Assembly (NCBI RefSeq): GCF_006345805.1
Contig: NC_043007.1
Span: 25,172,001-25,236,000 of the forward strand
Source: Octopus sinensis
Taxonomy: Eukaryota
Reading direction: 5' to 3'
Length of the DNA: 64,000 nt
Positions 9,229 through 64,000 of the stretch are shown piece after piece; position 1 is the first letter of the stretch; every line of letters starts with the position of its first letter. The notes beneath the pieces are model-generated. The model worked only from the letters and a program-made list of their open reading frames with translations, was not told where the DNA came from and did no database searches. Made by a program: the position numbers and the translations under genes.

Positions 9229-9449
9229 ACTCTTTACTCTTTTACTTGTTTCAGTCATTTGACTGTGGCCATGCTGGAGCACCGCCTTTAGTCGAGCAAA
9301 TCGGCCCCGGGACTTATTCTTTGTAAGCCTAGTACTTATTCTATCGGTCTCTTTTGCCGAACTGCTAAGTGACAGGGACGTAAACACACCAGCATCGGTT
9401 GTCAAGCAATGCTAGGAGGACAAACACAGACACACAAACATATACACAC

Positions 9450-9484
<35 letters not shown>

Positions 9485-18769: not shown

Positions 18770-18829
18770 CATGTGTGTATGTGTGTGTGTATATATATAT
18801 AAATACACACATATATATGTGTGCGTCTC

Positions 18830-18860
<31 letters not shown>

Positions 18861-19150
18861 ATGTATATATAAATACACACATATATATGTGTGCGTCTCT
18901 ATATATATATATATATGTGTGTGTGTATATATATATATAAATACACACATATATGTGTGCGTCTCTATATATATATATATATGTGTGTGTGTATGTATAT
19001 ATAAATATACACATATATATGTGTGCGTCTCTCTATATATATATATGTGTGTGTGTATGTATATATAAATATACACATATATATGTGTGCGTCTCTCTAT
19101 ATATATATATATGTGTGTGTGTATGTGTATATAAATATACACATATATCA
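18770..19150. repeat. ~60-bp compound minisatellite, ~6 copies
   Basis: Unit (TG)n(TA)n-AAATACACACATATATATGTGTGCGTCTC-(TA)n. Confidence 0.88.
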
Positions 19151-19400
19151 TCATCATCTTTTAATGTCCGCTCTCCATGCTGGCATGGATTGGATGGTTT
19201 GACAGGAGCTAGCCAGGTAGATGACTACCCCAAGCTACTATGCCTGTTTTGGCATGGTTTTTACAGGTGGATGTCCTTCCTAACACCAGCTATCCAGCAG
19301 ATTAAGTATATGAATGCATGTATGTATATATACATATATATATGTATACATGTGTGTGTGTATGTTTGCATACGTGTGTGTATGTATATATGTACATGTG

Positions 19401-19440
<40 letters not shown>

Positions 19441-19989
19441 CATGTATGTATTTATGTCTGTGTGTATGTATGCATGTATATATGTATGTGTGTATGTATG
19501 TATATATATATGTATGTGTGTAAGTATGTATGTATATATATATATATATATATATGCATGTATGTATGTTTGTAATACACTCCAAAGTGATACTACACAT
19601 TTTGCTTGTTCGTTCTTTCTGATATATCTGCCTGCTCAATGATGAACCACTTAGAGCCACTTTTTACTAAGCAGCTACAACACCACTATTGTTTTAGTTG
19701 CGGTTCAAGTCAGAATTTTAGTGGTAAACTAACTCAAGCACTTATTGTACACACCTATTACATTAAGTCATCAAATGAACCTCTTTATATACACACATAT
19801 GTATGTATGTATATATATATATATATATATATCTATATATATATATATATATATATATTATATGATTTGAAAACCCTAGTAGAATGCGAGAAAGCGCTAA
19901 TATATGATCTAAGTATATCAAGTATAAAAACATGTAAATTACAAATATCTGTAAATATAAACCATCATCCGATTTCTGAGTACCTCATT

Positions 19990-21485
<1,496 letters not shown>

Positions 21486-22359
21486 TTGCATATATTTTTG
21501 TATACTTGTAAGAGTCGAATGAGATCTCTTACCTTGGGGAAATTTTTCTATGACCAGATGCTCTCCTTGGTGCCAACCATCTCTAGTTTTCCACACACAC
21601 ACACTATTCTTTCAAGTATAAACAGCATGCTGCCTAAATGCATTTCCACTGCTCATATGGTATGACAGTGATATTCATTTATAATTAGTGCACAATGTCC
21701 AAACAAGGAAGCACAAATACTTACACACATACACACACGTCTGTATATTTAACAGTTGTTAAAAGCCCAACCTACCATGGCTCTCAGGTCTTACCACCTG
21801 GCATTAATGTCATTTTTATTTACTAATCTGCTCATATTTTTTTATGGATCTTCTTTTGTTTGGGAACATTTATTTTCGGACCAGACAGATTATGTATAAT
21901 CCATCCACTATACACTGATCTCAAATTTCTGAATTACTGTACATCCCCATCATTTAACAGGTCTTTGCTCTCTTCACAACATCTAAATAAGTGATGGTTG
22001 ATGAAGGATTGCATAAGGTTACTGTTATGTAATCAGTCTGATTGTCACTGAAACATTCGTAAGGATTTTGCAAGTAAATTATTTCTAACAATATTCTTTG
22101 GTGTTGTCTTTTGTATCTATACTTTGTGGTCATTATAGCCAGAAAATCCTGGATCATAACATTTCACTATAAGAGCACCATTTTTCATCATAGACTTCTA
22201 TTTTTAGTGTTATGTTCACTTGTTACTTTGACCTCACATATCTCACTCTCTCTGTCTCTCTCTCTTTCATAATTCTTGATGCTCACTTGCAATAATCTTT
22301 ATAGTATTCCTGCCCTGTTTCATAACCCATGTCTATACAATATTCTCTCCCTGTTTCAT

Positions 22360-26484: not shown

Positions 26485-26843
26485 AGCATTCTATATTCCC
26501 CCAACAAGATGGCATGATCATGAATAGAATGCCTTTGAACTCAGGTCTACCTGATCAGAGATGTCCTAGGGCTAAACTCAACATCTAGAAAAAACACATC
26601 AGAGCAATGTAGAACAGAATGCTTTACTCAAGTACACAAAATGCCACCCAATCTAGGAATTGAACCCATGACCTCATCCATTGTAAGTTCAACATCCTAA
26701 CCACTAGACCATGCAGATAATTGGAAAATCTATGATCATAATCTTGTTGGATCATGGTTGACCTAGGGCCAATGCTTTCAGTTGCAATATACTGCTTTTA
26801 TTCCAATTAATTTTCGAAATAATGAAGAATTTAATAAAATTAC

Positions 26844-27058
26844 TTTACTCTTTTACTTGTTTCAGTCATTTGACTGTGGCCATGCTGGAGCACCACCTTT
26901 AGTTGGGCAAATTGACCCCAGGTCTTATTCTTTGTAAGCCTAGTACTTATTCTATTGGTTTCTTATGCTGAACCATTAAGTTACGGGGACATAAACACAC
27001 CAGCATCGGTTGTCAAGTGATGTTGGGTGAACAAACACAGACACATAAACACACACAC

Positions 27059-27131
<73 letters not shown>

Positions 27132-33733: not shown

Positions 33734-34026
33734 AGCATTAAACTAATGCAACACTTGTCCCTCCCATGTTGTCTTCATTTTCTGCTCATTTGCTTTCTTA
33801 ATATGTGTGCTTGTGTTTGTGTGCATATGTATGTATATATACCATCATCATCATCATTGTTTAACGTCCATCTTCCATGCATGCATGGGTAGGAGATATA
33901 TATATATATATATGTATACACACACATGCATACATATATATATATATATATATATATGATTGATTGATTCTAGTTTCAGCTCACGAGCTGTGGCCATGCT
34001 AGGGCACCGATATATATATATTATAT

Positions 34027-34062
<36 letters not shown>

Positions 34063-34149
34063 CATGCATACATACATATATAGAAAGGGAAAAATTGATA
34101 GAAAGAGAAAGACAGATACACAGACAGACCAATAGATTGACATACAGAC

Positions 34150-34266
34150 AGTCAGGTAGATAGATAGATGGATAGATAGATAGATATAGATAGATAGATT
34201 GATAGATAGATAGATGGATAGATAGATAGATATAGATAGATAGATTGATTGATAGATAGATAGATT

Positions 34267-34354
<88 letters not shown>

Positions 34355-35030
34355 CAGACAGATAGATAATTAACAAATATATTTATATAATGATGTTTAG
34401 CCAGCCAGTGCAATTAGGTGTATTTTTCTCGTTAAAAAGCCACAGACGTATCCAACCAGCCAACCTTTTCTCTCCATATACACTATATATATATACATAG
34501 CAACTGGAAGAGACCTGCTTCAACACTGAATGAACAATCAGCAGTTTTTGTTGTTCTTGTTTCTGTTGTTGTTGTTGTTGTTGTTTTATGGCAATATTGC
34601 AGTCATTTATTCCATGCATTGTTTTATTCATACCAACAGGTATGTGTGTGTGTGTGCGTGTGTGCACATGTGTGTGTGTGTGTATTTAATAATAAACATA
34701 TGTGTGTGTGTGTTTTTATACACATATGTACACGAATGTGTGTTGTGTGTATGTATATTTGTATGTGTGTATATGTATATATGTGTGTGAGTGCATGCAT
34801 GTATGTATGTGTATATATATATATATATGTGCATGTGTTTGTGTATATATAATATATATATTATATATATATATATATAGATATATATATATATATGCAT
34901 GTTTGTGTAAAATTTTTATACATGTATATATACAGATAGATATAGATAAATAGAAAGATAGATAGATAGATAACCAAATAGACAAATATATAGGCTGATA
35001 GTTTGGAAGTTAGATAAGATAGATAGATAA

Positions 35031-35090
<60 letters not shown>

Positions 35091-35116
35091 GCAGATAGAT
35101 AGGCAGATAGATAGGC

Positions 35117-35178
<62 letters not shown>

Positions 35179-35200
35179 GCAGATAGATAGATAGATAGGC

Positions 35201-35234
<34 letters not shown>

Positions 35235-35260
35235 GCAGATAGATAGATAGATAGATAGGC

Positions 35261-35310
<50 letters not shown>

Positions 35311-35460
35311 GCAGATAGATAGATAGATAGATAGGCAGATAGATAGATAGATAGATAGGCAGATAGATAGATAGAAAGATAAAGTAACTAGATAGACAGA
35401 CAAATAGATGGATAGATAGACAGATAGACAGGTGAAAAGAGGGAAAGTCAAACTAATAGA
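34150..35460. repeat. (GATA)n/(GGCA)/(TG)n microsatellite cluster
   Basis: (GATA)n at 34150-34372 and 34960-35460. Confidence 0.9.
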
Positions 35461-35715
35461 AAGATAGATACTATAACTCCGTACACTGGTTCTTCAACCG
35501 CGGCTACCAAAGTATAGGTTCCATAGATAGGTGCAATCTATCTCTTCAAAATGCACATTATTGCAGGATGATGGAGACAGTTTAAACATTAAAAACAGAA
35601 TGAGGCAAGACGGATGGTGGAGATGGGGAGAGGGGTGGTGGTGGTAGTGATGTTAGAAGGGGAGTGGAGATTAAGAGTCAAGATTAAGAGAAGTGGAAAA
35701 GAAAGGAAAGGTGGA

Positions 35716-39320: not shown

Positions 39321-40226
39321 CGATGTTGTTATTATTATTATTATTATTATTATTGTTATTGTTCAGGTCACTGGTTGGAATAACAACCATCTAGCTTCCT
39401 GTAACTCTCTTCTGTTGTTGATTTTCAGTTTCTTTTGGTGTATGAGAATGGCCTCAGAGATTCTAAGGTTGCCCCTGTACCACTGTGTTGCCTAGAAGCC
39501 ATACTAAAGCATGCATTGAAGCTCAGCACTGCTCTCTGGCTCATCTGTTCATGTTGGACCATCAAACCCACGCCAGCATGACAAAAGGGATGTTGAATGA
39601 TGATGATGATGAAAACGAAATCAAACAGAATATCTCTGTCTATTTGTAAAAAAACTTCGAGTGAGCAAAAAGATTCAAGCGAGCAAAAAGATTTGAGCGA
39701 GGTCATTGCCAGTACCGCCTGACTGGCCCCCATGCCGTGGCACGTAAAAGGGCACCATTCAAGCGTGATCGTTACCAACATTGCCTTACTCTTACTGGCA
39801 CCTGTGCTGGTGGCATGTGTAAAACGATTCAAGCGAGGTCAGTGCCAGTACTGCCTGACTGGCCCCCGTGTCGGTGGCATGTAAAAAGCACCCACTACAC
39901 TCTCGGAGTGGTTGGCATTAGGAAGGGCATCCAGCTGTAGAAACTATGCCAGATCAAGATTGGAGCCTGGTGCAGCCATCTAGTTCACCAGCCCTCAGTC
40001 AAAATCATCCAACCCATGCTAGCATGGAAAGCGGACGTTAAACGATGATGATGATGATGATGATTATTTGTATGATTTTTTATTTATTACTGTAATGTTC
40101 CTTCTTTTATTTTTACCAGTTTTTGTAGGTGCTACTACAATACCTTTTACAATTTTCAAATTAATTTTTATATACAATTCTATATTGCTGAAAGGAAGAA
40201 TTTATATTATATATACTTTTTATAGT

Positions 40227-44808: not shown

Positions 44809-45220
44809 AGGCGCAGGAGTGGCTGTGTGGTAAGTAGCTTGTTTACCAACCACATGGTTCTGGGTTCAGTCCCACTGCGTGTCACCTTGCGCAAGTGTCT
44901 TCTACTATAGCCTCAGGTCGACCAAAGCCTTGTGAGTGGATTTGGTAGATGGAAACTGAAAAGAAGCCCGTCGTATATATGTATATATATATATATGCGT
45001 GTGTGTGTTTGTGTGTCAGTGTTTGTCCCCCTAGCATTGCTTGACAACCAATGCTGGCGTGTTTACGTCACCGTCACTTAGCGGTACGGCAAAAAAGACC
45101 GATAGAATAAGCACTGGGCTTACAAAGAATAAGTCCCGGGGTCAATTTGATCTACTAAAGGCGGTGCTCCAGCATGGCTGCAGTCAAATGACTGAAACAA
45201 GTAAAAGAGTAAAAGAGAGT
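44809..45220 (+). mobile_element. SINE family A, full length
   Basis: Homologous to the other family-A copies. Confidence 0.88.
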
Positions 45221-45629
45221 ATACAGCTGGAGCTGGAGGCTCCAATCGAAACAGGGGACTCGAAATGATAAGGTTAAGAAATGCTGTTATAGATTATGCC
45301 TGACTGAAAACGATCACACCCACATCATCCAAACAGACTGGGTGAAACTGGGCTTAGCTGCTAGTAATATATATGCAGCAAAAAAGCCTTAGGGCTGCAA
45401 GATAAGACAAAAATGGGTAACGTGAAGGAGAAATGAAAGCTGTTCTAAAGGGCTATAAATACAGGAGGGGTAGGGCAAGGGTCTCAGAAAATCGGGAGGC
45501 ATTGGTATCCAGAAGACCCAAGATGGCAGGTAAAGCTATGTAAGTGCTTCTGGAGGACCCTAGTTAGATTCTTGGTTTGATAATAATACAAGTGAGGAGT
45601 CTAATGCAGGTCTTGTGTGAGCATGTATA

Positions 45630-46226: not shown

Positions 46227-47024
46227 TGTTAAATAAAATGAGATAATGAAGCCAAGGCTGTGTGGAATTTATGTTAAATAAAATGAGACAAAGCCATTAT
46301 AGGACATTCTTTCTATAAATGTCCTATAAATTCCACACAGCATTGGTTTTGTTGTCTCATTTTATTTAACATATACATGTGTGTGTCATCATCATCATCA
46401 TCGTTTAACGTCTGCTTCCCATGCTAGCATGGGTTGGACATATGACTGAGGGCTGGCGAACCAGATGGCTGCACCGGACTCCAATCTTGATCTGGCAGAG
46501 TTTCTACAGCTGGATGCCCTTCCTAACGCCAACCACTCCGAGAGTGTAGTGGGTGCTTTTTACGTGCCACCAGCATGGGGCCAGTCAGGCGGCACTGGCA
46601 ACGACCTCGCTCGAATCTTTTACACATGCCACCGGCACAGGTGCCAGTAAGGCGATGCTTGTGTGTGTATATTTGTGTGTTTTAATGTGTGTTGTGTATG
46701 CATGAGTATGTAGGTCATGGATGTGTGTAGAGTTGTGTGTGAATAAAGAATGTAGTTTATTTCTTGTTACAGAAGTTTTTAATTCTCTATCAATCATCAC
46801 GTGACCCTTAGTGACTTACTACTACCACAGCTTCCACTACCACCTCCATCAACCAACATCCCCACCTATAACCCACCACCACCACTTTAACAATAGACAC
46901 AGTTCTTAATATATCATGCATGTGTGTGTATGCATCTATTTATGTCTGTATAGCATTCCTTATTTCTCCGAAACACTCCTCTCTCTTTCTCTCTTTCTAT
47001 CTCTCTCTTCTTTTGCCTGCTACT

Positions 47025-47428: not shown

Positions 47429-48067
47429 CCCTATCATTACCAACCCGGCTGAAACCGGCTCTGGCTCTGAGTACAAATGTCTTGTTTTCATAAGTTTTGA
47501 ATTAAAATCTTCCACCAAACCTTAGTCACAATTTATGTTCCTAACACTAGCTTAATGCTATACTCTTACTCTTTTACTCTTTTACTTGTTTCAGTCATTT
47601 GACTGCGGCCATGCTGGAGCACCGCCTTTAGTCGAGCTAATCGACCCCGGACTTATTCTTTGTAAGCCCAGTACTTATTCTATCGGTCTCTTTTGCCGAA
47701 CCGCTAAGTGACGGGGACGTAAACACACCAGCATCGGTTGTCAAGCAGTGCTAGGGGGACAAACACACATACATACACACATATATATATATACATATAT
47801 ACGACAAGCTTCTTTCAGTTTCCGTTACCAAATCCACTCACAAGGCATTGGTCGGCCCGGGGCTATAGCAGAAGACACTTGCCCAAGATGCCACGCAGTG
47901 GGACTGAACCCGGAACCATGTGGTTGGTTAGCAAGCTATTTACCACACAGCCACTCCTGCGCCTGAAGCCACTCTTGCGCCTGAGTTATTTTACTAAATT
48001 CTTTGATATATTTAAAGAAATTGAAAGAAACACAGAGCATCTCAAAATAAATACAGTAACAAAAGGG
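47429..48067 (+). mobile_element. piggyBac-type MITE interrupted by a family-A SINE
   Basis: TTAA TSDs at 47425-28 and 48068-71; same family as 14586. Confidence 0.8.
47562..47964 (-). mobile_element. SINE family A inside a piggyBac MITE
   Basis: Homologous to the other family-A copies. Confidence 0.88.
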
Positions 48068-51614: not shown

Positions 51615-52250
51615 CATCATTGTTGTCTAATGTCCGCTTTCCATGCTAGCATGGGTTGGATGATTTGACTGAGGACTGGCGAACCAGATAGCTGCACCAG
51701 GCTCCAATCTTGGTTTGGCAGAGTTTCTACAGCTGGATGCCCTTCCTAACGCCAACCACTCCAAGAATGTAATGGGTGCTTTTATGTGCCACCAGCACGA
51801 GGGACAGTCAGGCGGTACTGGCAGTGGTCACGGAAAATTGTGTTTTTTTTTTTTACGTGTCACCTGCTCACTGGCACAAGTGCCAGTAAGGTGACACTAT
51901 ATATATATATATGGCAAATAAAAGACAGAAGATGGAATATACGAGAATTTCTATTATTAATCATGACAGTTGTTTCAATACATCCAGCATCGATCCCTCA
52001 TGGGTGGGACAATCAACAACTGGTTCAGGAGCATCTGGCGGTGCAGATGTATCTCGTCCGGTGATAAATAGATACAACTCGTTAAAATAATAGTTCTGCA
52101 ATGTAACTCCTCATTTTGTACAAAGAAAAGCGGCCAGATGGAGGAATTATCTTCATTTATATAGAAGATCAAAAATAAAATCACAGATGGTAAAAAAAGA
52201 GAAACAAGTACATAATCCAGCGAGAAAATTATCAAAAATATATATATTAT

Positions 52251-52759: not shown

Positions 52760-53480
52760 CATGACTAACTTGCGGCCTGCAACAGACGAAATTGGTCTGA
52801 TAACGAAATTGATGTTTTAATAAACACATGGCTCTCTCTTTCCAAACAGAAAATCTAAATGTCTTGTGTTTGAATGAGATTGCCGAAAAAAAACATCACA
52901 CGATCCGTCAAACAGATTCGTAGCAAGTTGAAACATATCGAAGTATCTTTCAAACTGATAAGAGGCCATTATGAAAAGCTTCTACATATTTTCACAGTTC
53001 AAGAACAACAACAGCTAGAAAATCAGCAGCCACAACAACAACAACAACAGAATGAGCTACTCCTGGTTCCCAGCACAATGGCTGACCCTGACATCGGTCA
53101 GGCACAACAACAACAACAACAGACACCGCAACAAGAACAACAACAGCCACTCCTCAACTCTAGCTTACTAGACGATTCACTAAATGCCAGTATCTTTTCA
53201 CCGCTCTCACAGCAACCACCACAATTATCATCATCATCATCACCACCGCTGCCACCATCGTCTTCTATCACCAAAAATACCAACAGAAAACCAAATAAGA
53301 AACCACTGCCCTCTTCCCCCACATCACACCTCAATACTACTGCAGTAACAAAAACTTAAAGAACATAGGAAGCAGAATGCGCCCCCCACGGCACAAACAA
53401 GAAATCCCCAAATATGCCGCTATTCACTGCGCCAGAGACTCTGCACAAATAGTGACTGCATCTTCACGCATCTACCGGCA
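52760..53480 (+). pseudogene. LINE ORF1 remnant, Gln/Ser/Pro-rich, with a CCCH-type motif
   Basis: ORF 52874-53359 has polyQ/polyS runs. 53415-53471 encodes CRYSLRQRLCTNSDCIFTH (C-x8-C-x4-C-x3-H). Confidence 0.6.
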
Positions 53481-54029
53481 CTAGACGCACTACCGGCCAA
53501 GGCCAAAGCACGCATCCCACAATAACATCAACACCACCAAATAGTAAATCGAAATTCAAAACACACACAACTCGGAGTCCCAAAATCTGCCAGTATTCCA
53601 ACGTGAGAGAACATGTCTACTGAGTGACTGTCCCTTCACTCATCTTCCAGGGACCCGACGCACAAACAGAAACGGGGCCTCAAGCCACACACAACCTGAA
53701 TAACAATAAAAATAGAAACACACCATGCTGCAGTAATGCTGGTCCAGTATTTTCAGGAAGACACAAAACAACAACAACAAAAGTGGAAACTACAACCCTA
53801 TCCAACAGTGCAACCACACCTCCAGCCAAAAACTGCTCCCTAAGCAGGAAAATTCTTTTTTAGCCATGTTGAACATGGCAAAAGAGATACACAAAAACAT
53901 TCTAGCCATCACTCAACACCATCCTATGCTATTACCCCAGTGCACCAATTCCCCACATTGCTGCCACCACAACACACACAAAAAATCCAAGCCCCCTGCA
54001 ACAGTCAAAACCAGCCACTACACTAACCT

Positions 54030-56973
54030 CCACATTCCTACTCAATGCACAAGGTGTCAGCCCTTCCATCAATGCACAAAAATGGAAGGTCCAATTCATT
54101 GAAGACTGGGTTGGTAACCATTCACACCACATCCCTTTCTTCATTCTCACTGAGACCCACCTTGGCAACTCCCACTTGGAAGCCGAAGTGAGAGTGAAGA
54201 ATTTCACAACCATCCGCGCGGATCGTATCGGCAGGAGGAAGGGTGGAACTGCCATTTTCCTGCATGATTCATTTACGGCAGATGGAAATAGTATATTCTC
54301 CAACGGCTACTGTGAATCAGTCACCGTGCACAACAAAGCCAATGACCTGACAGTATTGGGCTCTATAGGCCGCCCCAAAACACCCATACTGTGCTTTAAA
54401 GAATGCCTCAACAGCATTAAGTGCTTTATTCAACAGTGCCATTCTAGCAACATACTCATGATGGGAGACTTCAATCTACCCTGTGTTGACTGGACTACAA
54501 ACTGTTTGAAACCAAGCACTCCCGCCTCAACCGCTGACAAAGAAGCAGCAGAGTCACTTTTCGACTTTACGAATGAGTTTTTCTTGTCCCAACTTGTCCT
54601 TGCACCAACAAGACATCAGAACATTTTGGACCTAGTGTTTAGTAACCACACTAACACTATACATAACGTTACAGTGGAAAAAACCCTTCTTTCAGACCAT
54701 GACATGGTTCTCTGTAACATGAATTCCACCAGCCGAAAGCTAATCCTAGTTACCTTCCTCCAGCCCACCCATTTGACAACATGGATCTCCATAAAGCCAA
54801 CTGGGATGCAATCAGGAACGAGCTATCAAATGTTGACTGGTCCTTTACACATACACACATCTCCACCAACCATAAAACATCTTGGCAGATCTTTGTAGAC
54901 ACCGTCACAGACATATGTGCAAAACGCTCCCCACCAGACCTGTGAACAAAAAGTGCAGAATCCCTCAAAACAGAAAAACCATTATCAGAAAAATAAAAAG
55001 AACAAACAAAAAATTAACAAACTAAAGTACTGCCAACAGCAACACACATTCGACGGCTATCGCACTGCTTGAATCCAAAAATATAACCTCCAACAATGCA
55101 TGAAGACCCTCATCAATAACCAAAGATCAGCTGAGGAGAAGTGGGCCATTGAAAAAATCAAACTCAACCCCAAAGTGTTCTTTTCATTTGCGAGGAAACG
55201 CAGGGTCACTGTCTCCACTGTAGGCCCTCTAATTGACGAAACTGGCACTCTCCAAGATAATGCCAAATCCATGGCCGAGATACTGCAGAAACAATACTGC
55301 TCTGTTTTCAGCAATCCTGATATGGCCGATCTGGGCTGTATCAGTGATGTCAACCCCCAACCACTATATCGGACATAACGTTTAGTGCCCCTGATGTCTT
55401 AGCGGCGATAAACGAAATAAAACACAATTCAGCAGTAGGCCCCGATAGGTTCCCTGCTTGTGTCCTGAAGGTGTGTCGACACCAACTTGCATCTCCCCTT
55501 GCTAATCTGTGGAGAAACTCACTGGATGCTGGCTATATTCCAAAAACCTTCTGTCCCAGTCTGTTGTCCCAGTTTTCAAAAAGGGAAACAAGTCCCTTGC
55601 AGTGAATTACCGTCGATCGATCTCACTCACCTCTCATATCATAAAGGTATTTGAGAGGGTGGTGAGATCTCGAATAACCCAATTTCTGGAAGCAACAGAC
55701 GGCTGATCTCCAACCAACATGGGTTCCGTAATGGAAGGGACTGCCTAACGCAGCTCCTGCATCACTTTGAGGACATTTTGAGAGCTTGGGAGAGGGCTCC
55801 AACACCGATGTCATCTACCTTGATTTCAGTAAGGCCTTCGACAGGGTCGTTCACAAGATCCTATTGAAAAAACTATCCAACATTGGTGTCTCTGGAAAGT
55901 TACTGAAATGGATTAATGTTTTTCTGACAGACAGATCTCAACATGTTGTAGTTGAAGGGGTAAAATCAAGCCCAGCCAAAGTCAGTAGTGGTGTTCCGCA
56001 AGGCACTGTGCTGGCCCACTTCTTTTCATCATTTACATTAATGACATTAATGACATCATCAAGCACAGCAACATAAAAATCTTTGCAGATGACTCCAAGC
56101 TACAGAAGGTCATAAACGAGGCGAGTGACCGGACATGCCTTCAGTCAGATCTACTGGCTGTTATCCAATGGGCAGAAAAAAAACAATATGCTGCTGAACG
56201 AGGATAAATTTGAGCTAATCCACTTTGGAAAAGAGGATGCCCTGAAACTCCCATACTCCCTTCCTTCATTGGTGAACTCTCTTGCGGCGTCCAACAACAT
56301 CAGAGACTTGGGAGTAATTGTGGACAACAACGTAAGCTGGGCCACTCATATAAACACCAAAGTTGACATGGCCCGCAGAATGTGTTCCTGGATTCTCAGA
56401 ACTTTCCAGTCGAGAGATATCCACACCATTATCCTTCTCTTCTCCACTTTTGCCCGACCCCACCTTGAATACTGTTGTCCACTGTGGTCTCCCCACACAA
56501 TACAAGGTATCATAAAAGTTGAAGCACCTCAAAGGGCAATCACAAAAAAGATAGATGGCATGACAGGCCTCGACTATTGGGGTCGACTAGAAAAGCTAAA
56601 ACTCTATTCTCTCCAACGTCGTCGTGAGCGCTACATCATCTGCATGATGTGGAAAATATTCCATCAGCATTGCCCAAATGATGTTGGCATCACCTTTAAG
56701 GTACATCCAAGGCTTGGGCCCCGTGCCATCCGCCCAAAACAAAAATCGCACTCTCATCTCATAACAACAATACGGCACAATTATTTCACCTCAATTGGCC
56801 CCACTCTCTTTAACATTACACCAAAACACATTAAAACAGAAACTGACCCTATAGGGTTCAAGAAGTCTTTGGACAGATTCCTTCAAGAAATCCCGGATAA
56901 ACCCCCTACACCCGGATATGTCTCTGTAAACAATAACTCTCTACTTGAGTGGGCCATAGTGCCCAAATTCTGA
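54030..56973 (+). pseudogene. LINE ORF2 (APE endonuclease + reverse transcriptase), multiple frameshifts
   Basis: EN motifs LNAQG, ILTETHL, MGDFNLP, LDLVFSN and SDHDMV. RT motifs YLDFSKAFD, SGVPQGTVL and FADD. CR1-type C-terminus RPHLEYCCPLWSPH...YSLQRRRER. Broken into at least 5 ORF pieces. Confidence 0.92.
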
Positions 56974-57064
56974 CTTGAAAGACTTCACCAGGTGGTGCTA
57001 TTAAGTTAGACATGGCCTGGGCCAATAATGGCCGAAACCTATCAAAGTATCAAAGTATCAAAGT

Positions 57065-57310
57065 ATATATGTATATATATATGTGTGTACGTGTGTTTGT
57101 GTGTCTGTATTTGTCCCCCTATCATTGCTTGACAACCGATGCTGGTGTGTTTATGTCCCCGTTACTTAGCGGTTTGGCAAAAGAGACCGATAGAATAAGT
57201 ACTGGGCTTACAAAGAATAAGTCCCGGGGTCGATTTGATCGACTAAAGGCGGTGCTCCAGCATGGCCGCAGTCAAATGACTTAAACAAGTAAAAGAGTAA
57301 AGAGTAAAGA
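57065..57310 (+). mobile_element. SINE family A, 3' half
   Basis: Runs from (TA)n/(TG)n to the GTAAAAGAG tail. Confidence 0.85.
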
Positions 57311-57568
57311 GTATATATATATTACATACCTTCCATTTTGTAAGATAGTAGGATGTGCTTTAGTGGAGATTTGGCTGGTATTTCTAACAAGTCAAATAAC
57401 CACATAGATTCTCCTTCAAAACTTCAGCACAACCAGTTTATTGTTCTTGCATAAAAAGGTACTTTATTGTCTTGTATTTTATTTTTTTTTGTATATGATT
57501 TACTTTTAATAATGTTTTATGATATTTTGGTGGTTAAATCTAGTTATGCTCCAGTGAAGAACTCAAAG

Positions 57569-57721
57569 ATGTCAACAGCAACGACGGAGAATATCTTAAA
57601 TGAAGTCTTTGGACTGATTGAGAAACATGGAGAAAGTGAATATTTTGGAGAACCAGTCAGTATCAAGGAACATATGATCCAGTGTGCCATGTTAGCTGAA
57701 GAAGAGAATTATTCTAAAGAG
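57569..57721 (+). CDS. phnZ: ATG-containing exon of a PhnZ/TmpB-like HD-domain diiron oxygenase (2-amino-1-hydroxyethylphosphonate dioxygenase-like)
   Basis: MSTATTENILNEVFGLIEKHGESEYFGEPVSIKEHMIQCAMLAEEENYSKE followed by GAG|GTGAGT, phase 0. The motif Y-x-G-E-x5-E-H-x2-Q-C-A has the spacing of recalled PhnZ DYIGEAINQLEHSLQCA. A T-rich tract and candidate acceptors (TAG ending 57543, CAG ending 57553) lie upstream. The HD motif is expected in the next exon, which is not in the window. Confidence 0.85.
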
Positions 57722-57809
57722 GTGAGTTAATGAACATTGTTGTTGTTATTGACCTACCTTCCAGGTATTGTGTAACTCAGACTATGTTATCTAGTGTGTT
57801 TATATATAT

Positions 57810-58170
57810 ATATGTTACGTTAAGTTAAGTTAATTTTTTGGCTCAAAAATCAAAAAGCAAGGCCATGTAGGGGGATATGGAGTTATGTACAGGGAGGGTG
57901 TTCATGCAAAGAGTTCAGGCCATTTCTGGTCAAGAGAGACTGTAAACCGAGCGGTCATTGGCATCTTCACTATCTCGTCCGGCAGCTTATTCCACGGATC
58001 TGCAACCCAGATGGAGAAAGCCCCTCTCCTTTGATTGAGATGAAATCGTCGCAGATAGAGCTTTTCGGAGTGACCCTGCAGCCGACGCTCTGGAGCAGGA
58101 GTAAAGAACAGCTCTTTCGAGAGGTTACACTTTCCGCTTATGATGTTGTGGTCGTACCTATTTGGATATG
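57810..58170 (-). mobile_element. 5'-truncated CR1 LINE (second subfamily)
   Basis: Encodes LQGHSEKLYLRRFHLNQRRGAFSIWVADPWNKLP; (TTAAC)n tail. Confidence 0.8.
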
Positions 58171-59079
58171 AGAAGTATGGCCTCAAACCTCTGGTCTGGT
58201 TTTTTATTTCCTGCAAAATTGTGCTGCTGTTGATAATTTGCATAATGGAAATATATACTAAGCATTTAACACCTGTCATTGTGTTCCTTGTTGGACACTG
58301 AAGAGGCTATTAGCAAGATTATATAATATTTCAACAATGATTATGTAATCATGACAGAAATTAGTTGAAACACGTGTATGTTTAATAAACCATTGGATAC
58401 CATAGCTGCTGTGTGTGTGTGTATGTGTGTGTATAAAAAATAAATGTGCCCTTTTAAAGCCTAGCCAGGCTCATGGGCCTGGTTTCCTGGTTTCAATGAC
58501 ATATGTGTTCCCCAGCTGGATGGGATGCCAGTCCATCGCAGCGTTACTCATTTTTGCCAGCTGAGTGGACTGGAGCAACGTGAAATGAAGTGTTTTGCTC
58601 AAGAACACAACGCGTTGCCTGGTCCAGGAATGGTCATTCACAACCATCATGTGATGTCTTCACAAGGTTATAAACACACACACAGATATGCAAAGAGCTT
58701 CTTTCAGTTTCCCTCAACCAAATCCACTCAAGGCTTTGATCAGCCTGGGGGCCAAACCAGATAACACTTGCCCAAGGTGCCATGCAGTGGGACTGAACAC
58801 ATACCTATGTGCTCGGGTAGTAAGATTCTTAACTAAACAGCCACACCTGTGTCTAAAATGAAATTAAATATGATATTTCACAATTTGTAGAAAATTGAAA
58901 CTCACAGAACAATTATTTGCTAAGAATAATAAGTATGGTGAATGGCTTGTTAGGAACAAAAACAACGATTCTTCACCCAAAATTTGGAGTAAAACACTTG
59001 AATATTTTTGTGATTGCATTTTGAATTTTCCATCTTAATGCCGTAGATAACCAGACTTAAGTCAAACGTCATCACTGCT

Positions 59080-60110
59080 GATGACAGAAGAAAGATAACA
59101 CATTGGCAATTAAAGAAGCTGATAAAGGAAGTGCAGATATATTGATTGTTCATGAATATTAAATGTTATAAAAATTTTGTTTTATCCATGCTAGAAGACA
59201 ATGTACACTACAGAAGGGTTATAAATTATAACCAACAGAAATTGATGGAGCACCATCATCATTATCATTACCATCATTGTTTAACACCATCTTCTATGCA
59301 TGCATGGGTAGAACAGTTCACAGGAGCTGGTCAGGTAGAAAAACTTCTCTATGCTACTCTGTTTTGGCAGGGTTTTTATAATTGGATACCCTTCCTAACA
59401 CCAACCACCCCACAGAGTGGACTCGGTGCTTTTTACGTGGCACTAGCACAGGCGAGGTTAGTTTTGGCATGATTTTTACAGCTGGATGCCCTTCCAGGTG
59501 CCAACCACTTTACAGTTGGACTGGATGCTTTTTACATGGCACCAACACTGTCAGGGTCACCATGTATCTTACAATTTTGTTACACTTGTACCAAAAAGGG
59601 GGAAGGTGCTTGACTTAGTGTTTAATGTATTTGGCTCACAATCATAAAGTTCTGAGTTCAAATCCTGCAGCACTTAACGTATTTTTTGATATAGTGAAAT
59701 TTTATACAAACATCCCTTCTCTTGCTACTATGGAATACGTAGAAGCAATAAAATTCTGTTTGGCAAATGATGTGAAAGAATTACCAGAACATAAGAAAAT
59801 AATTAATAATTGAGGAATTCAAATCTACTTCCCAAAATAACTGTTTTGTGTTTGATGCCAACTATTACCAACAAAAATCTAGAATTGCAATGGTCACAAA
59901 AGTAGCTCCAGTCTACGCAAATTTAGTCATAAGATATATGGAGATTATGCTGTATCAATATTTGTAAAGAAACTACAGAAACTCTGTCAGCATATAAGAG
60001 AATACTGGAAAAGATTTCTACATGATTGCTTCATTCTTTTGAAGGGAAGCTTGGAGAAACTAAATGAATTTTAAATACTACTTAATGGAATAAATGATAA
60101 ACACTAAAAC
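59080..60110 (+). mobile_element. Decayed Penelope-like element RT fragment (interrupted by a family-D repeat)
   Basis: Encodes AIKEADKGSA, YTNIP, IAMVTKVAPVYANL and YWKRFLHDCFI, with stops and frameshifts. A CT-rich tail and GAAACGTT motif follow near 60580. Confidence 0.75.
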
Positions 60111-60364
60111 GAAAAATTCCCTTGTTTGAATAGTTGATGTAAAGATAACTCTTTGGTTGTTTTATCTGTATTTGTTTTCCTATTTTTGTACTCTTTCACC
60201 TATTTACATAGCAATATGCTTAAGCCTGTTTTTTTTTCTCCACTTTTGTGGTTTTGATAATCTGCTGTGATAACATTTTTGCTCTCTCCTCTCTTTCCCT
60301 TTTTCTCTACCCTCCATCTTTCTACCTCTCTATTTTTGTCTCTCTATTTCCTCATTCATATACT

Positions 60365-60424
<60 letters not shown>

Positions 60425-60639
60425 CATCACTTTTCTATTTACTTACTTTTCCAGTGTTCCTCTTTTGTCCTACTTCTCTTCCAATATCATGACCTCCTTT
60501 TTCACTGACACCTTCCTTAAAACAACACATCTTCTCTGTTTCCTTTGCTACTCTCATTTGTTTATTTAGGGCCCATGCCTGAAACGTTCATATTTTCATT
60601 TTCCCCTGTTCAAGAGAAAATGTCTCACACACACTGTAA

Positions 60640-61075
60640 GACATACATCTAGATGGCCCCTTGACAGTTAAGTGCCTCAGTCATCGACATAGCACAGTGA
60701 TCTATACCATTATATTCTATATACTTACATCTAGGTGGACTAGATTACTGACAATGAAATAACTTGGTCAGAGGTCACACTGTGGTGGTACCTACTTACA
60801 GTTAGATGGACTGAACTTTGGACAGTTAAGTGTTTTAGTCATGGACACATTACAGTTAATTATACCTATACTGTGGTACCTGCTTTCAGCTAGATAGACT
60901 GGGGTGTTGGCAGTTAAATATCTTAGTCTTGAACACGGTACAATGGACCATTCCACACCATGGGATCTACTCACAGCTTAGTGTATTGTTGATAGTTAAG
61001 TAGCTTGATCATGGAGTCATGAACTACAGACCGCACTGAGGGTCATAACTGTTTACAACTAGATGGACTAAGCTT
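60640..61075. repeat. Degenerate ~80-bp tandem repeat, 6 copies
   Basis: TACTTACA.CTAGATGGAC-like cores at 60644, 60722, 60793, 60881, 60968 and 61050. Confidence 0.6.
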
Positions 61076-61189
61076 CACCATCATCATCACCATCATCATC
61101 ACCATCATCATCACCATCATCATCATCATCATCATCAGCAGCATTTAACATCTGTTTTTCATACTGGCATAGGTTGGATGGCTTGACAG

Positions 61190-61570
61190 AAGCTGGCAGA
61201 AACGTTAGCATGCTGGGCGAAATGCTTAGCGGTATTTCATCTGCTGTTATGTTCTGAAGTCAAATTTCGCCGAGGTCCACTTTGCCTTTCATCCTTTCGG
61301 GGTCGATAAATTAAGTACCAGTTACGCACTGGTGTCGATGTAATTGGCTTAATTCTTTTTGTCTGTCCTTGTTTGTCCCCTCTGTGTTTAGCCCCTTGTG
61401 GGTAGTAAAGAAATAGGTATTTCATCTGCCGTTATGTTCTGAGTTCAAATTTCGCTGAGGTCAACTTTGCCTTTCATCCTTTTGAGGGTCGATAAATTAA
61501 GTACCAAATCCCTTTGTCTGTCTTTGTTTGTCCCCTCTATGTTTAGCCCCTTGTGGGCAATAAAGAATAA
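61190..61570 (+). mobile_element. SINE family E, tandem partial dimer
   Basis: The body from GGTATTTCATCTG is repeated at ~61220 and ~61415. Confidence 0.78.
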
Positions 61571-62099
61571 GAAACTGACAAGGCCAAAGGCCACACCAGG
61601 TTTCATAGCCTGTTTTGGCTTGGTTTCTGCAGCTGAATGCCCTTCCTAACACCAACCACTTTACTAAGTGTACTGGGTGCTTTTTACATGGCACCAGCAC
61701 AAGTGCTCTTTATGTGGCACCAGCATTAGTGCTTTTTTTTTTAAGGTAGCCCCAACGCCAATGCTTTTTAGATGGCACCAGCACCTACACCAGTGCATTT
61801 TATGTAGCACATTGGTTTTAGGATCTCAGTTCTCTTGTGGTCTTAAAAGTAGTTCCTTGAATGAAACACTACGATACCAGCTAACAGAAAGGAGACTATT
61901 GGTCAGTAGTTGACTTGGTCTCGGACACAGTATAGAGGCCAATGAGAGGAAATGACCTTGTGACTCACTGCATAGTCATCCAGTAACTCTCTGTCCTCAT
62001 TGTCAACTCATTGAACTGTGGTTCCCTTCAATGATTTTTATGGTATTTCCATAAATTTCAATTTCTTATCATTTCCCCCATACCCCAACCGTCATCCTC

Positions 62100-62530
62100 T
62101 TGACATTTTCAACATCATCAGCATCATCATTATCATTGTCGTCATCGCCATCATCGTCATCATCGTTGCCATTGTCATCATTATCATCATCATCATCATT
62201 GTCATCATCATCATCATTATCAACATCTTCGTCATCAACATGATTATTATCATCATCATCATAATTATCTATTATCATCATCATCGACATTGCCATCATT
62301 ATCATCATCATCATCATTATCAACATCTTCGTCATCAACATGATTATTATCATCATCATCATAATTATCTATCATCATCATCATCATCATCATCATTGTC
62401 ATCATCATCATCATTATCAACATCTTCGTCATCAACATGATTATTATCATCATCATCATAATTATCTATCATCATCATCATCATTGACATTGTCATCATT
62501 ATCATCATCATCATCATCATCATTATAATT
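62100..62530. repeat. (ATC)n microsatellite with a ~100-bp higher-order unit x3
   Basis: ATCAACATCTTCGTCATCAACATGATTATT at ~62219, 62319 and 62416. Confidence 0.88.
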
Positions 62531-63095
62531 ATACATGAGTTACTTCCTCTCCCTGGTTTTTATACTGTGTCCATGACCAAGACTACTACTTATCAACAGT
62601 ACTGTTTACCTTGCTATAAGTTGGCACCACTATTTACCAACAGCAGCAGCAGCAGCAGCAGCAATACCTTTGGCAAGGCATAATATAAGAACCACCCAAC
62701 TGAGGGCAACAACCATTTAACCCTCACCTCTTCCATTGAAAGCTTCCTAATAGACATCACAACAGAATGAATGTGACTATCTCAGGTGTACCACCACCAT
62801 CACCACCGCCACTACCAATATCACCACTAATATCATCATCATCATCATTGTCGTCATCATCATCATCATCATCAGATTATGGTGAGTTTAAAAATTACTC
62901 GTCCGGTTAATAGACACACACACACACACACACATACATAAAAAAAAAATCCACCAACCACATCATCAGAGCCACCCAGCCATCCATACGTAATCATTAA
63001 AAAAAAACTGGATTAAGGGTGGAGTTAATCTCATTGAAATAATCCTCTTAAAACTGTTGTTCTTCTTGTTTGCGTTCTTCTCTCCCCCTCTCTCT

Positions 63096-63143
<48 letters not shown>

Positions 63144-63206
63144 GTATATATATACACATACTACATATATACATACATACATATACATATATATCTATAC
63201 ATACAT

Positions 63207-63280
<74 letters not shown>

Positions 63281-63291
63281 TATATATATAT

Positions 63292-63354
<63 letters not shown>

Positions 63355-63639
63355 TACACACACACACACACACACATATATATGTGTGTTTGTGTGTGTG
63401 CATATATGTGTTATAATGAGGTTGACCTGTTATACACTCACACTGACATGTGTAAATATATTTCTAGATAGACAGCTTAGTGTGTGTGTGTGTGCATATA
63501 TCATTTTTGCCATGTAAAAAAGCATATATCTGTCAATCATATAACATGTTACGTTTCTGTTCATGGTCTGACACTTGACTGTACATATACAAAATGCCAT
63601 GATCCTGCATGGCATTTAACTGAGAAGAGACATTTATGT

Positions 63640-64000
63640 TGTTGGCAAATCTCAGGAAGCATGGAAGTTTTGAAAGATGCAGTGCTCCGACAACTAACAA
63701 CTGATGCCGGCAGTTTGTTCCATGCTTCAGCAACTCTTAGCACGAAATGCTTCACGCTAAGAGTTGCTGAAGTATGGAACAAACTACCGGCATCAGTTGT
63801 TAGTTGTTGGAGCACTGCATCCTTCAAAACTTCCATGCTTCCTGAGATTCGCCAACACTACACCTGATTTTCTCCCTTCCATACACACCCAAGACACACC
63901 CAAGACATTTGTACATTACTGCATATGCTTTATTCGCACTTTTGACAAGTTGTGGTGCATCTGAGCACTGTATACAATAATTTCATTATTATTATTATTA
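63640..64000. mobile_element. CR1 3' end with a foldback inverted duplication
   Basis: 63640-63741 is the reverse complement of 63756-63857. The right copy continues into the 3' UTR and (ATT)n. Confidence 0.85.

What the first reader, a model, noticed from the sequence alone, without database searches (positions are those of the whole stretch)
57540..57727. Intron-containing animal gene for a PhnZ/TmpB-type C-P bond-cleaving oxygenase
Seen: a 51-codon exon with a canonical donor and the motif YFGEPVSIKEHMIQCA, embedded among host SINEs, so it is nuclear DNA and not bacterial contamination. Established: bacterial PhnZ is a mixed-valent diiron HD oxygenase that converts 2-amino-1-hydroxyethylphosphonate to glycine + Pi. 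Its Tyr24, Glu27 and His34 correspond to Y25, E28 and H35 here. TmpB does the same for the trimethylated substrate. Molluscs make abundant 2-aminoethylphosphonate lipids. Inference: this cephalopod may encode its own oxidative phosphonate-recycling pathway. That would need a PhnY/TmpA-like 2OG-Fe hydroxylase partner elsewhere. The frame stays open through both candidate acceptors, so an N-terminal extension or fusion is possible. Similar models may already be auto-annotated in invertebrates; I know of no biochemical test in an animal.
Basis: partly seen in the sequence, partly recalled or inferred. Interest (0 to 1): 0.82.

Follow-up and report, generated by a model that had tools for sequence, protein, structure and literature searches.

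The report
First exon of animal PhnZ-like oxygenase
The window holds the first coding exon of an intron-containing animal gene related to the bacterial iron enzymes that break carbon-phosphorus bonds; such animal genes are already auto-annotated in corals, sea anemones and acorn worms, but I found no report of one being tested biochemically.

Summary
An ATG at 57569 opens 51 codons ending at 57721, followed by a consensus donor GAG|GTGAGT. The peptide matches only the phosphonate HD-domain oxygenase family (NCBIfam TmpB 1e-9, TIGR03276 Phn-HD 1.7e-9; PDB TmpB 5e-7, PhnZ 6e-3). It carries the YxxE loop (Y25, E28) and the first iron-binding His (H35).

It is nuclear animal DNA. A roughly 250-bp SINE-like repeat with at least seven other copies in the window and a decayed LINE lie just upstream, and the intron is full of interspersed repeats. 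The phase-0 intron after codon 51 sits at the same alignment position in both Ptychodera flava genes and in two unannotated eukaryotic contigs. dN/dS against those two contigs is about 0.2.

Only exon 1 is in the window. The HD...H...H...D ligands lie beyond 64000 and are unverified for this species.

Full-length animal homologues keep all ligands. In a rough tree they form one clade next to a Bacteroidota clade, outside characterised PhnZ and TmpB. They score just under the TIGR03276 cut-off, so the substrate is inferred, not shown.

Verdict: a new member of a known, already auto-annotated but biochemically untested animal family. Interest is moderate.

The parts
57569..57721 (+). Coding exon 1 (51 codons, starting at the ATG) of a PhnZ-family HD-domain oxygenase gene. 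It carries the YxxE loop (Y25, E28) and the first iron ligand, H35.
   Evidence: Sequence read. NCBIfam TmpB 1e-9 and TIGR03276 1.7e-9. PDB TmpB 6NPA 5e-7 and PhnZ 4MLM 6e-3 with residue alignment. Family HMM E 3.3e-19, the only hit in the window. dN/dS 0.19-0.23 against the closest relatives.
57722..57727 (+). 5' splice donor GTGAGT (exon end GAG|GTGAGT), phase 0.
   Evidence: The position and phase are the same as the donors in L001 (AAG|GTAAGT), L008 (AAG|GTGAGT) and both Ptychodera flava genes (GAG|GTAGGT, GAG|GTAGGG).
57722..64000 (+). Intron 1, incomplete (at least 6279 bp, running off the window). It is made largely of interspersed repeats and contains no further exon of the gene.
   Evidence: tblastn with 12 homologues and the family HMM on six-frame segments find nothing downstream. 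Repeat copies are shared with the rest of the window.
57455..57568 (+). Unique upstream stretch in the same open frame: either the 5'UTR of a first exon, or the end of an upstream intron plus UTR. Candidate acceptor AGs are at 57542-43 and 57553-54, and an in-frame TAA is at 57452-54.
   Evidence: The stretch is unique in the window. Relatives have in-frame stops between a similar acceptor-like site and the ATG.
57063..57322 (.). SINE-like interspersed repeat copy of about 250 bp, immediately upstream of the exon.
   Evidence: blastn against the window finds at least seven other full or near-full-length copies at 83-93% identity on both strands: 9228-9470, 47559-47802, 15308-15555, 44973-45223, 26843-27079, 13717-13952 and 1-128.
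52874..56973 (+). Decayed non-LTR retrotransposon (LINE) upstream of the gene, with endonuclease and reverse-transcriptase pieces in different frames.
   Evidence: Pfam Exo_endo_phos_2 5e-12 for 53906-54895 and RVT_1 4.8e-9 for 55771-56073. ORF list.

Best explanation
Positions 57569-57721 are the first coding exon of a stand-alone, three-exon-type animal gene for a PhnZ-family HD-domain enzyme of roughly 190-205 aa. Exons 2 and 3 lie beyond the end of the window.

The gene belongs to a metazoan clade, seen here in cnidarians, a hemichordate and this presumed mollusc. The clade looks vertically inherited: the first intron is at the same codon boundary and phase as in the hemichordate genes.

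Inferred mechanism, by homology with PhnZ and TmpB:
- A mixed-valent Fe(II)/Fe(III) pair is held by H35 plus the downstream HD...H...H...D ligands.
- In the resting enzyme Y25 caps Fe2.
- When a 1-hydroxy-2-amino(alkyl)ethylphosphonate binds, E28 swings in to hold its amino group and Y25 leaves.
- O2 then binds Fe2 and the C-P bond is cleaved oxidatively to phosphate plus glycine, or an N-methylated glycine.

The likely physiological role is turnover of the aminoethylphosphonate head groups of the animal's own or dietary phosphonolipids (CAEP and N-methyl-CAEP).

Shown here: the exon, the donor, family membership of the fragment, three active-site residues, the conserved intron position, and purifying selection on the exon. 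Inferred: the rest of the gene, its expression, iron binding, the substrate and the physiological role.
For: - Family assignment of the exon.
- Y25, E28 and H35 align with PhnZ Y24, E27 and H34. The roles of the YxxE loop and the H..HD..H..H..D motif are in PMC8177086.
- Nuclear eukaryotic context: SINE copies, LINE, repeat-filled intron.
- The same phase-0 intron is present in two Ptychodera flava genes and in two unannotated eukaryotic contigs. Cnidarian genes lack that intron but share intron 2 with Ptychodera.
- dN/dS is 0.19-0.23 against the closest exon-1 relatives.
- Full-length animal homologues align with PhnZ at E 1e-40 to 1e-42, with all ligand blocks identical: EH, LHDxGH, HE, GHV..AKRYL, QGGPM, WDE.
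- Those homologues score 148.7-200.8 bits on TIGR03276; the four best score 192.5-200.8.
- Animals form a clade with 92% bootstrap whose internal branching follows taxonomy.
- The nearest bacterial clade sits in phosphonate and phosphorus-scavenging gene clusters: a TIGR03364 FAD oxidoreductase (429 bits), a PhnX-like hydrolase, DUF5690, a phospholipase C-type phosphoesterase and SusCD.
- Octopus muscle contains CAEP and N-methyl-CAEP (PMC12335516). CAEP is a main sphingolipid of molluscs and cnidarians (PMC9174665).
Against: - Only 51 of about 195 codons are visible. Five of the six metal ligands, and therefore the integrity of the gene, are unverified for this species.
- No protein carrying this exon turned up in the protein collections searched, and no gene with its exact read-through product is on record. 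There is therefore no annotated model or assembled transcript to lean on.
- Full-length animal homologues fall just below the curated TIGR03276 cut-off and far below the TmpB and hydroxymethylphosphonate-dioxygenase equivalog cut-offs.
- In a rough neighbour-joining tree they lie outside characterised PhnZ and TmpB, so substrate transfer is uncertain.
- No PhnY/TmpA-type hydroxylase is seen next to any animal or nearest-bacterial gene examined.
- The cephalopod origin of the window was not verified.
Confidence: 0.7

Rival explanations
1. Same family and same diiron-oxygenase chemistry, but a substrate other than hydroxy-AEP. It could be another hydroxylated phosphonate, or a non-phosphonate C-X bond as in MIOX. 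The animal clade would then be a functionally distinct subfamily.
For: The animal proteins miss the curated cut-offs of all three equivalog-type models. They branch, together with a Bacteroidota clade, outside PhnZ 4MLM and TmpB 6NPA. No PhnY/TmpA neighbour is present. A related domain is fused to a zinc alcohol-dehydrogenase-like domain in P0081, and Oculina has GFO/IDH/MocA oxidoreductase neighbours.
Against: The YxxE loop, which recognises the substrate amino group in PhnZ and TmpB and is absent from MIOX (PMC8177086), is intact in this exon. The nearest bacterial relatives sit among phosphonatase-like and aminophosphonate-type oxidoreductase genes. The taxa carrying the gene are those rich in CAEP.
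Confidence: 0.15
2. A decaying gene or orphan exon. Exon 1 survives, but the remainder has been lost or disrupted by the transposon insertions that fill this locus, so no enzyme is made.
For: The rest of the gene is not in the 6.3 kb that follow. The locus is saturated with LINE and SINE copies. No protein containing this exon turned up in the collections searched.
Against: The reading frame, start codon, catalytic residues and consensus donor are all intact. dN/dS is about 0.2. Relatives also have first introns longer than 10 kb (L001), so a long intron is normal here. The exon and its 240-bp upstream stretch are free of repeat insertions.
Confidence: 0.12
3. A fusion protein like fungal PhoF. 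The exon would be internal, spliced at 57543 or 57554 to upstream exons encoding a PhnY-type hydroxylase or another domain.
For: The frame is open for 38 codons upstream of the ATG, through two AG dinucleotides preceded by a T-rich tract. A PhnY-PhnZ fusion exists in a fungus (PMC10574752) and a dehydrogenase-PhnZ fusion exists in a bacterium (P0081).
Against: The ATG aligns with the N-termini of all animal homologues. The two closest relatives have in-frame TGA codons 4-12 nt upstream of the same ATG. The DNA immediately upstream is a SINE and a LINE. The selected large open segments of the window that were scanned gave no Pfam domain other than transposon domains. The window was not scanned specifically for PhyH or TauD exons.
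Confidence: 0.03

Closest known systems
PhnZ (bacterium HF130_AEPn_1; PDB 4MLM/4MLN/4N6W), (R)-2-amino-1-hydroxyethylphosphonate dioxygenase (glycine-forming)
   Same: The exon has the same N-terminal helix, the YxxE loop and the first His ligand. Full-length animal relatives align end to end at E ~1e-40 with every ligand block conserved. The size and single-domain architecture are the same.
   Different: Only 13 of 42 residues are identical over the comparable part of the exon. The animal clade branches outside PhnZ in the tree. This gene has introns. No adjacent PhnY was found. Activity is untested.
TmpB (Leisingera caerulea; PDB 6NPA), (R)-1-hydroxy-2-trimethylaminoethylphosphonate oxygenase
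   Same: It is the best single PDB and NCBIfam match of the exon (32.5 and 38.4 bits). The Y..GEPV..EHM.Q motif is shared.
   Different: Full-length animal homologues score only 112-165 bits against a 300-bit cut-off, which is lower than their score on the PhnZ-type model. TmpB is the outgroup in the tree. No TmpA partner was seen.
Auto-annotated animal homologues: Ptychodera flava '2-amino-1-hydroxyethylphosphonate dioxygenase (glycine-forming)-like' (two tandem genes), and Nematostella, Exaiptasia, Oculina, Porites and Paramuricea HD-domain proteins
   Same: The family is the same: 20-28 of 42 residues are identical over the exon. The first-intron position and phase are identical to the Ptychodera genes. 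The animals form one clade.
   Different: Those genes are complete and compact (1-3 kb). This one has a first intron longer than 6.3 kb and only exon 1 is visible. Cnidarian genes lack intron 1.
Bacteroidota 'phosphonate degradation HD-domain oxygenase' (TIGR03276 members, for example Mucilaginibacter and Algoriphagus)
   Same: This is the nearest bacterial clade: 100% bootstrap together with the animals and 26-27 of 42 identical residues over the exon.
   Different: They pass the TIGR03276 cut-off (219-227 bits). They have no introns. They lie in clusters with a TIGR03364 FAD oxidoreductase, a PhnX-like hydrolase, DUF5690, a phospholipase C-type phosphoesterase and SusCD. They have QAA where the animals have QCA.
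PhoF of Fonsecaea multimorphosa (fungal PhnY-PhnZ fusion)
   Same: It is the only eukaryotic oxidative C-P cleavage enzyme I found in the literature (PMC10574752).
   Different: It is a two-domain fusion. The animal genes are stand-alone, and relatives of this exon have stop codons upstream of the start.

Membership tests
PhnZ/TmpB-type HD-domain diiron oxygenases (TIGR03276 Phn-HD and relatives) | Significant sequence homology to the family and to no other | tested here: met
   The only NCBIfam hits are TmpB 1e-9, TIGR03276 1.7e-9 and HMP dioxygenase 2.7e-4. The only PDB hits are TmpB and PhnZ. The family HMM gives E 3.3e-19. Pfam has no hit for the 51-aa fragment.
PhnZ/TmpB-type HD-domain diiron oxygenases (TIGR03276 Phn-HD and relatives) | Score above the curated whole-protein cut-off (214.6 bits) | tested here: inconclusive
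   A 51-aa fragment cannot reach the cut-off (37.5 bits). Full-length animal homologues reach 148.7-200.8 bits, just under it for the best four, while the nearest bacteria reach 219-227.
PhnZ/TmpB-type HD-domain diiron oxygenases (TIGR03276 Phn-HD and relatives) | YxxE substrate-gating loop (PhnZ Y24/E27; TmpB Y30/E33) | tested here: met
   Y25-F-G-E28 aligns with PhnZ Y24-I-G-E27. The role of the loop is described in PMC8177086.
PhnZ/TmpB-type HD-domain diiron oxygenases (TIGR03276 Phn-HD and relatives) | First metal ligand His (PhnZ H34) | tested here: met
   H35 in KEHMIQCA aligns with H34 in LEHSLQCA. It is invariant in alignment A1.
PhnZ/TmpB-type HD-domain diiron oxygenases (TIGR03276 Phn-HD and relatives) | Remaining ligands HD...H...H...D | not testable with these tools
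   They are encoded by exons beyond position 64000. All are present in the Ptychodera and Nematostella homologues.
PhnZ/TmpB-type HD-domain diiron oxygenases (TIGR03276 Phn-HD and relatives) | Works after a 2-oxoglutarate/Fe hydroxylase partner (PhnY or TmpA) | not tested
   No such gene is listed within 10 kb of the Ptychodera, Nematostella or Oculina genes or within 6 kb of the Bacteroidota relatives. The window was not scanned specifically for one, and the rest of the genome is unavailable.
PhnZ/TmpB-type HD-domain diiron oxygenases (TIGR03276 Phn-HD and relatives) | O2-dependent C-P bond cleavage with a mixed-valent diiron cofactor | not testable with these tools
   This needs biochemistry. 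No animal enzyme has been assayed in the literature I could search.
TmpB equivalog (NF049941, trimethyl substrate) | Score above the equivalog cut-off (300 bits) | tested here: inconclusive
   The exon scores 38.4 bits. Full-length animal homologues score 112-165 bits, far below the cut-off and below their TIGR03276 score. The relatives therefore fail, but this gene's full length is unseen.
PhoF-type PhnY-PhnZ fusion | N-terminal hydroxylase domain in the same polypeptide | tested here: inconclusive
   The frame is open for 38 codons upstream, but the ATG aligns with homologue N-termini. Relatives carry in-frame stops upstream of the ATG. The upstream DNA is SINE and LINE.
Vertically inherited metazoan gene (as opposed to contaminant or recent transfer) | Spliceosomal intron at a position shared with other animals, in a host repeat context | tested here: met
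   A phase-0 intron after the codon aligned with Ptychodera E60 (P0123) and E70 (P0095) is present in the window, L001, L008 and both Ptychodera genes. SINE and LINE context. Animal clade at 92% bootstrap.

The most novel reading that the evidence does not exclude
Animals that build their membranes with aminoethylphosphonate sphingolipids (cnidarians, hemichordates, molluscs including this presumed cephalopod) may carry an anciently inherited, stand-alone PhnZ-clade diiron oxygenase. It would let them cleave the C-P bond of their own or dietary (N-methyl)aminoethylphosphonate head groups. This would be the first endogenous animal phosphonate-catabolic enzyme. It might work without a classical PhnY/TmpA partner, either on naturally hydroxylated phosphonate or with a different hydroxylase.
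Probability: 0.4. Interest if true: 0.7.

Novelty: new member of a known kind. Interest (0 to 1): 0.42.

Why it matters
Phosphonolipids such as CAEP are major membrane lipids of molluscs and cnidarians, yet C-P bond cleavage is described almost only in microbes. A recent review calls eukaryotic phosphonate metabolism 'even more cryptic' than the prokaryotic kind (PMC10574752).

A conserved, intron-bearing animal PhnZ-family gene gives a concrete candidate for how these animals recycle phosphonate phosphorus. It is directly testable by expression and 31P-NMR or phosphate-release assays.

The contribution of this particular window is modest. It adds one more (presumed mollusc) lineage and a shared bilaterian intron position to a family that is better represented by complete, already annotated genes in other animals.

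Tried and rejected
- A word-indexed homologue search with the exon alone found no candidates. A profile of the exon plus its closest relative found only five short exon-1-type ORFs and no full-length protein from this species.
- An exact look-up of the read-through ORF found no contig on record, so the sequence beyond 64000 could not be fetched.
- The search for exons 2 and 3 was negative by every method: motif regex, tblastn with 12 homologues at word size 2 and a family HMM on all six-frame segments. It was also negative within 10 kb downstream in the closest relative's contig, L001.
- Bacterial contamination was rejected because of the intron, SINE and LINE context.
- An HD phosphohydrolase assignment was rejected for the visible part. 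There are no hits to hydrolase families, and the YxxE loop specific to PhnZ and TmpB is present.
- A tree built from the N-terminus alone is too weak to place the exon precisely (54% with L001 and L008), so I do not rely on it.
- The primary PhnZ and TmpB papers are not held in the library.
- ARAGORN found no tRNA gene.
- The organism could not be identified with the collections on hand.

Full report
**The observation**

The + strand carries an ATG at 57569. It is followed by 51 codons (MSTATTENILNEVFGLIEKHGESEYFGEPVSIKEHMIQCAMLAEEENYSKE) ending at 57721. A consensus splice donor follows (GAG|GTGAGT, 57722-57727) and then a stop at 57728-57730.

The same frame is open upstream to 57455, with an in-frame TAA at 57452-54. 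It passes two AG dinucleotides at 57542-43 and 57553-54 that sit behind a T-rich tract. I only refine the exon to 57569-57721.

**Is it more than chance?**

- Against NCBIfam the peptide hits only three families: the TmpB equivalog (1e-9), TIGR03276 'phosphonate degradation HD-domain oxygenase' (1.7e-9) and the hydroxymethylphosphonate dioxygenase model (2.7e-4).
- Against all PDB sequences it hits only TmpB 6NPA (5e-7) and PhnZ 4MLM/4N6W/4N71 (about 6e-3). Pfam gives nothing for so short a piece.
- An exhaustive phmmer search of 1.8 billion representative proteins gave 110 hits with E <= 1e-3. Apart from one low-complexity artefact (P0001), every hit I fetched and read is a PhnZ-family N-terminus.
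- A profile built from 23 family members, run over all 3191 six-frame open segments of the window, hits this segment alone (E 3.3e-19, profile positions 3-53).

**Active-site residues in the exon**

HMMER aligns Y25, E28 and H35 with PhnZ Y24, E27 and H34. According to PMC8177086:

- PhnZ and TmpB, unlike MIOX, have a YxxE loop.
- In the resting enzyme the Tyr ligates Fe2.
- On substrate binding the Glu swings in to hydrogen-bond the substrate amino group, and the Tyr leaves so that O2 can bind.
- The diiron site is held by H...HD...H...H...D.

The exon thus carries the loop and the first His. The other five ligands are not in the exon.

**The rest of the gene is outside the window**

A motif search, tblastn with twelve homologues at word size 2 and the profile search all find nothing else, on either strand. 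Intron 1 is therefore at least 6279 bp long.

The intron is filled with interspersed repeats that recur elsewhere in the window. A long first intron seems normal for this lineage. In the closest relative's contig (L001) no second exon is found within 10 kb either.

**Genomic context**

- Positions ~57063-57322 are one copy of a roughly 250-bp repeat. It has at least seven other full or near-full-length copies in the window at 83-93% identity on both strands. The stretch 57330-57800, which includes the exon, is unique.
- Upstream, 52874-56973 is a frameshifted non-LTR retrotransposon: endonuclease 5e-12, reverse transcriptase 4.8e-9.
- The window is about 38% GC with long microsatellites.

This is eukaryotic nuclear DNA, not a bacterial contaminant. 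I could not verify that the organism is a cephalopod.

**Relatives**

A profile search of the 5.8-billion-protein collection returned complete animal proteins as the best hits:

- Oculina patagonica
- Porites harrisoni
- Nematostella vectensis ('predicted protein' / 'HD domain-containing protein')
- Exaiptasia diaphana
- Paramuricea clavata
- two Ptychodera flava proteins that NCBI already names '2-amino-1-hydroxyethylphosphonate dioxygenase (glycine-forming)-like'

The closest matches to the exon itself are short ORF calls from unannotated eukaryotic contigs: P0002 (64% identity), P0229 (63%) and P0021. Each is an exon 1 read through its donor into the intron. No full-length protein carrying this exon was found.

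**Gene structure**

- In Ptychodera flava both tandem genes have three exons. Exon 1 ends ...YSEE|GT in phase 0, which is the column where the window's exon ends ...YSKE|GT.
- L001 (...YSDK|GTAAGT) and L008 (...YSTK|GTGAGT) have the donor at the same place.
- Nematostella and Oculina lack this intron but share the second intron with Ptychodera (...YHEK|L...YYNR|L).
- In L001 and L008 an in-frame TGA lies 4-12 nt upstream of the ATG, behind an acceptor-like site. There the ATG is the true start and any upstream exon is non-coding.

The open upstream frame in this species means it is not formally excluded.

**Selection**

Nei-Gojobori counts over 47 shared codons give dN/dS of 0.23 against L001 and 0.19 against L008. 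Synonymous sites are near saturation. The exon is 78% identical to L001 at the DNA level, while the flanks align at background levels.

The exon has therefore been under purifying selection for most of the time since these lineages split. This cannot exclude very recent inactivation.

**Which subfamily?**

- Full-length animal proteins score 148.7-200.8 bits on TIGR03276 (cut-off 214.6); the four best score 192.5-200.8 and the divergent Ptychodera paralogue P0095 scores 148.7. They score 112-165 on the TmpB equivalog (cut-off 300) and 105-130 on the hydroxymethylphosphonate dioxygenase equivalog (cut-off 300).
- The nearest bacterial proteins pass TIGR03276 at 219-227 bits.
- Against PDB, Ptychodera and Nematostella proteins match PhnZ (E 1e-42 and 1e-40) better than TmpB (1e-37 and 1e-29). 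The blocks EH, LHDxGH, HE, GHV.AKRYL, QGGPM and WDE are conserved.
- In a neighbour-joining tree (191 columns, 100 bootstraps) the animal sequences form one clade (92%) whose internal order follows taxonomy. That clade joins a Bacteroidota-type clade at 100%. Characterised PhnZ and TmpB lie outside. Sampling is small and the method simple, so this is indicative only.
- Over the exon, identity is 20-28 of 42 to animals, 26-27 of 42 to the Mucilaginibacter-type Bacteroidota proteins, 13 of 42 to PhnZ and 16 of 42 to TmpB.

**Context of the nearest bacteria**

In Mucilaginibacter xinganensis and two metagenome contigs the HD gene lies beside these genes:

- a TIGR03364-family FAD oxidoreductase (429 bits)
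- a PhnX-like 'phosphonatase-like hydrolase' (180 bits, below its cut-off)
- a DUF5690 protein
- a phospholipase C-type phosphoesterase
- a SusC/SusD pair
- a phosphodiesterase

This is a phosphonate and phosphorus-scavenging setting. No PhyH-type PhnY is listed within 6 kb. Likewise no such gene is listed within 10 kb of the Ptychodera, Nematostella or Oculina genes.

**Physiology**

CAEP is described as the main sphingolipid of molluscs and cnidarians and is reported in cephalopods (PMC9174665). Octopus vulgaris muscle contains both CAEP and N-methyl-CAEP (PMC12335516). The taxa in which I found the gene overlap with CAEP-rich taxa, which fits a role in head-group turnover. This is correlation, not proof.

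**Literature**

The library holds no paper that discusses or assays an animal PhnZ homologue. A 2023 review reports one eukaryotic case, the fungal PhnY-PhnZ fusion PhoF. [quoted passage not shown]

**Verdict**

The finding is real and correctly classified at the family level. It is best described as exon 1 of a cephalopod-type member of an animal PhnZ-family clade. That clade is already present, complete and partly named in public annotations, but I found no report of it being studied biochemically.

New here are the identical intron position shared with a hemichordate and the evidence of constraint. The integrity of the gene, its expression, its substrate and its partner remain open.

My confidence:

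- About 0.9 that this is a genuine exon of such a gene.
- About 0.55 that the encoded enzyme cleaves a hydroxy-aminoethylphosphonate-type C-P bond.

Noticed in passing
L002 10001-13038 and 20413-23038 (Ptychodera flava CM083796.1): There are two tandem PhnZ-like genes. The second (P0095) has lost the Glu of the YxxE loop (YIGS instead of YIGE) and reads HDIDH instead of HDIGH. It also scores much lower on TIGR03276 (148.7 against 197.7 bits). It may be a paralogue with changed substrate recognition.
   Followed up: partly
L005 1-12582; L006 and L007 1-12579 (Bacteroidota contigs): The nearest bacterial relatives of the animal clade have no PhnY neighbour. They sit beside a TIGR03364 FAD oxidoreductase, a PhnX-like hydrolase, DUF5690, a phospholipase C-type phosphoesterase, SusC/SusD and a phosphodiesterase. 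This looks like a phosphonolipid-scavenging locus that combines 'hydrolytic' and 'oxidative' C-P enzymes.
   Followed up: partly
P0081 (536 aa): This is a fusion of an N-terminal zinc alcohol-dehydrogenase-like domain with a C-terminal PhnZ-like domain (match at residues 350-398). This architecture differs from the fungal PhnY-PhnZ fusion.
   Followed up: no
L004 11599-20946 (Oculina patagonica): Two consecutive GFO/IDH/MocA-family oxidoreductase genes lie directly downstream of the coral PhnZ-like gene. This could be coincidence or a functional neighbourhood.
   Followed up: no
window 59604-59676 (+): Rfam tRNA match just above the gathering score (32.6 against 29 bits) inside intron 1. ARAGORN does not call it. 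It is next to a short repeat family found at about 15 other places in the window, so it is probably a tRNA-derived SINE head or a tRNA pseudogene.
   Followed up: partly
window 59380-59550, 61590-61700, 11143-11394, 15852-16373, 20596-20967, 24614-25057, 39428-39972, 46493-46575, 51673-51891: A second interspersed repeat family. Units of about 70-90 bp, often in tandem pairs, translate to '...[10 protein letters not shown]...VGAF..PPTQ'. Copies are 75-85% identical.
   Followed up: partly
window 57902-58279 (-): A 125-aa ORF on the opposite strand inside intron 1. Its C-terminal part (...WNKLPDEIV...) resembles the tail of the LINE ORF at 56125-56973 by eye. It has no Pfam hit and is probably a LINE 3' fragment.
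   Followed up: partly
window 18600-21700 and 33850-35500: Two very long simple or tandem-repeat tracts. The first is an AT-rich TA/TATG-type microsatellite (GC 0.23-0.30). The second is a tract with strong GC skew (+0.54) that translates to SIYLSIYL... on the minus strand.
   Followed up: no
window 63640-63857: An inverted duplication: 218 bp match their own reverse complement at 92% identity. This is a palindromic element near the end of the window.
   Followed up: no
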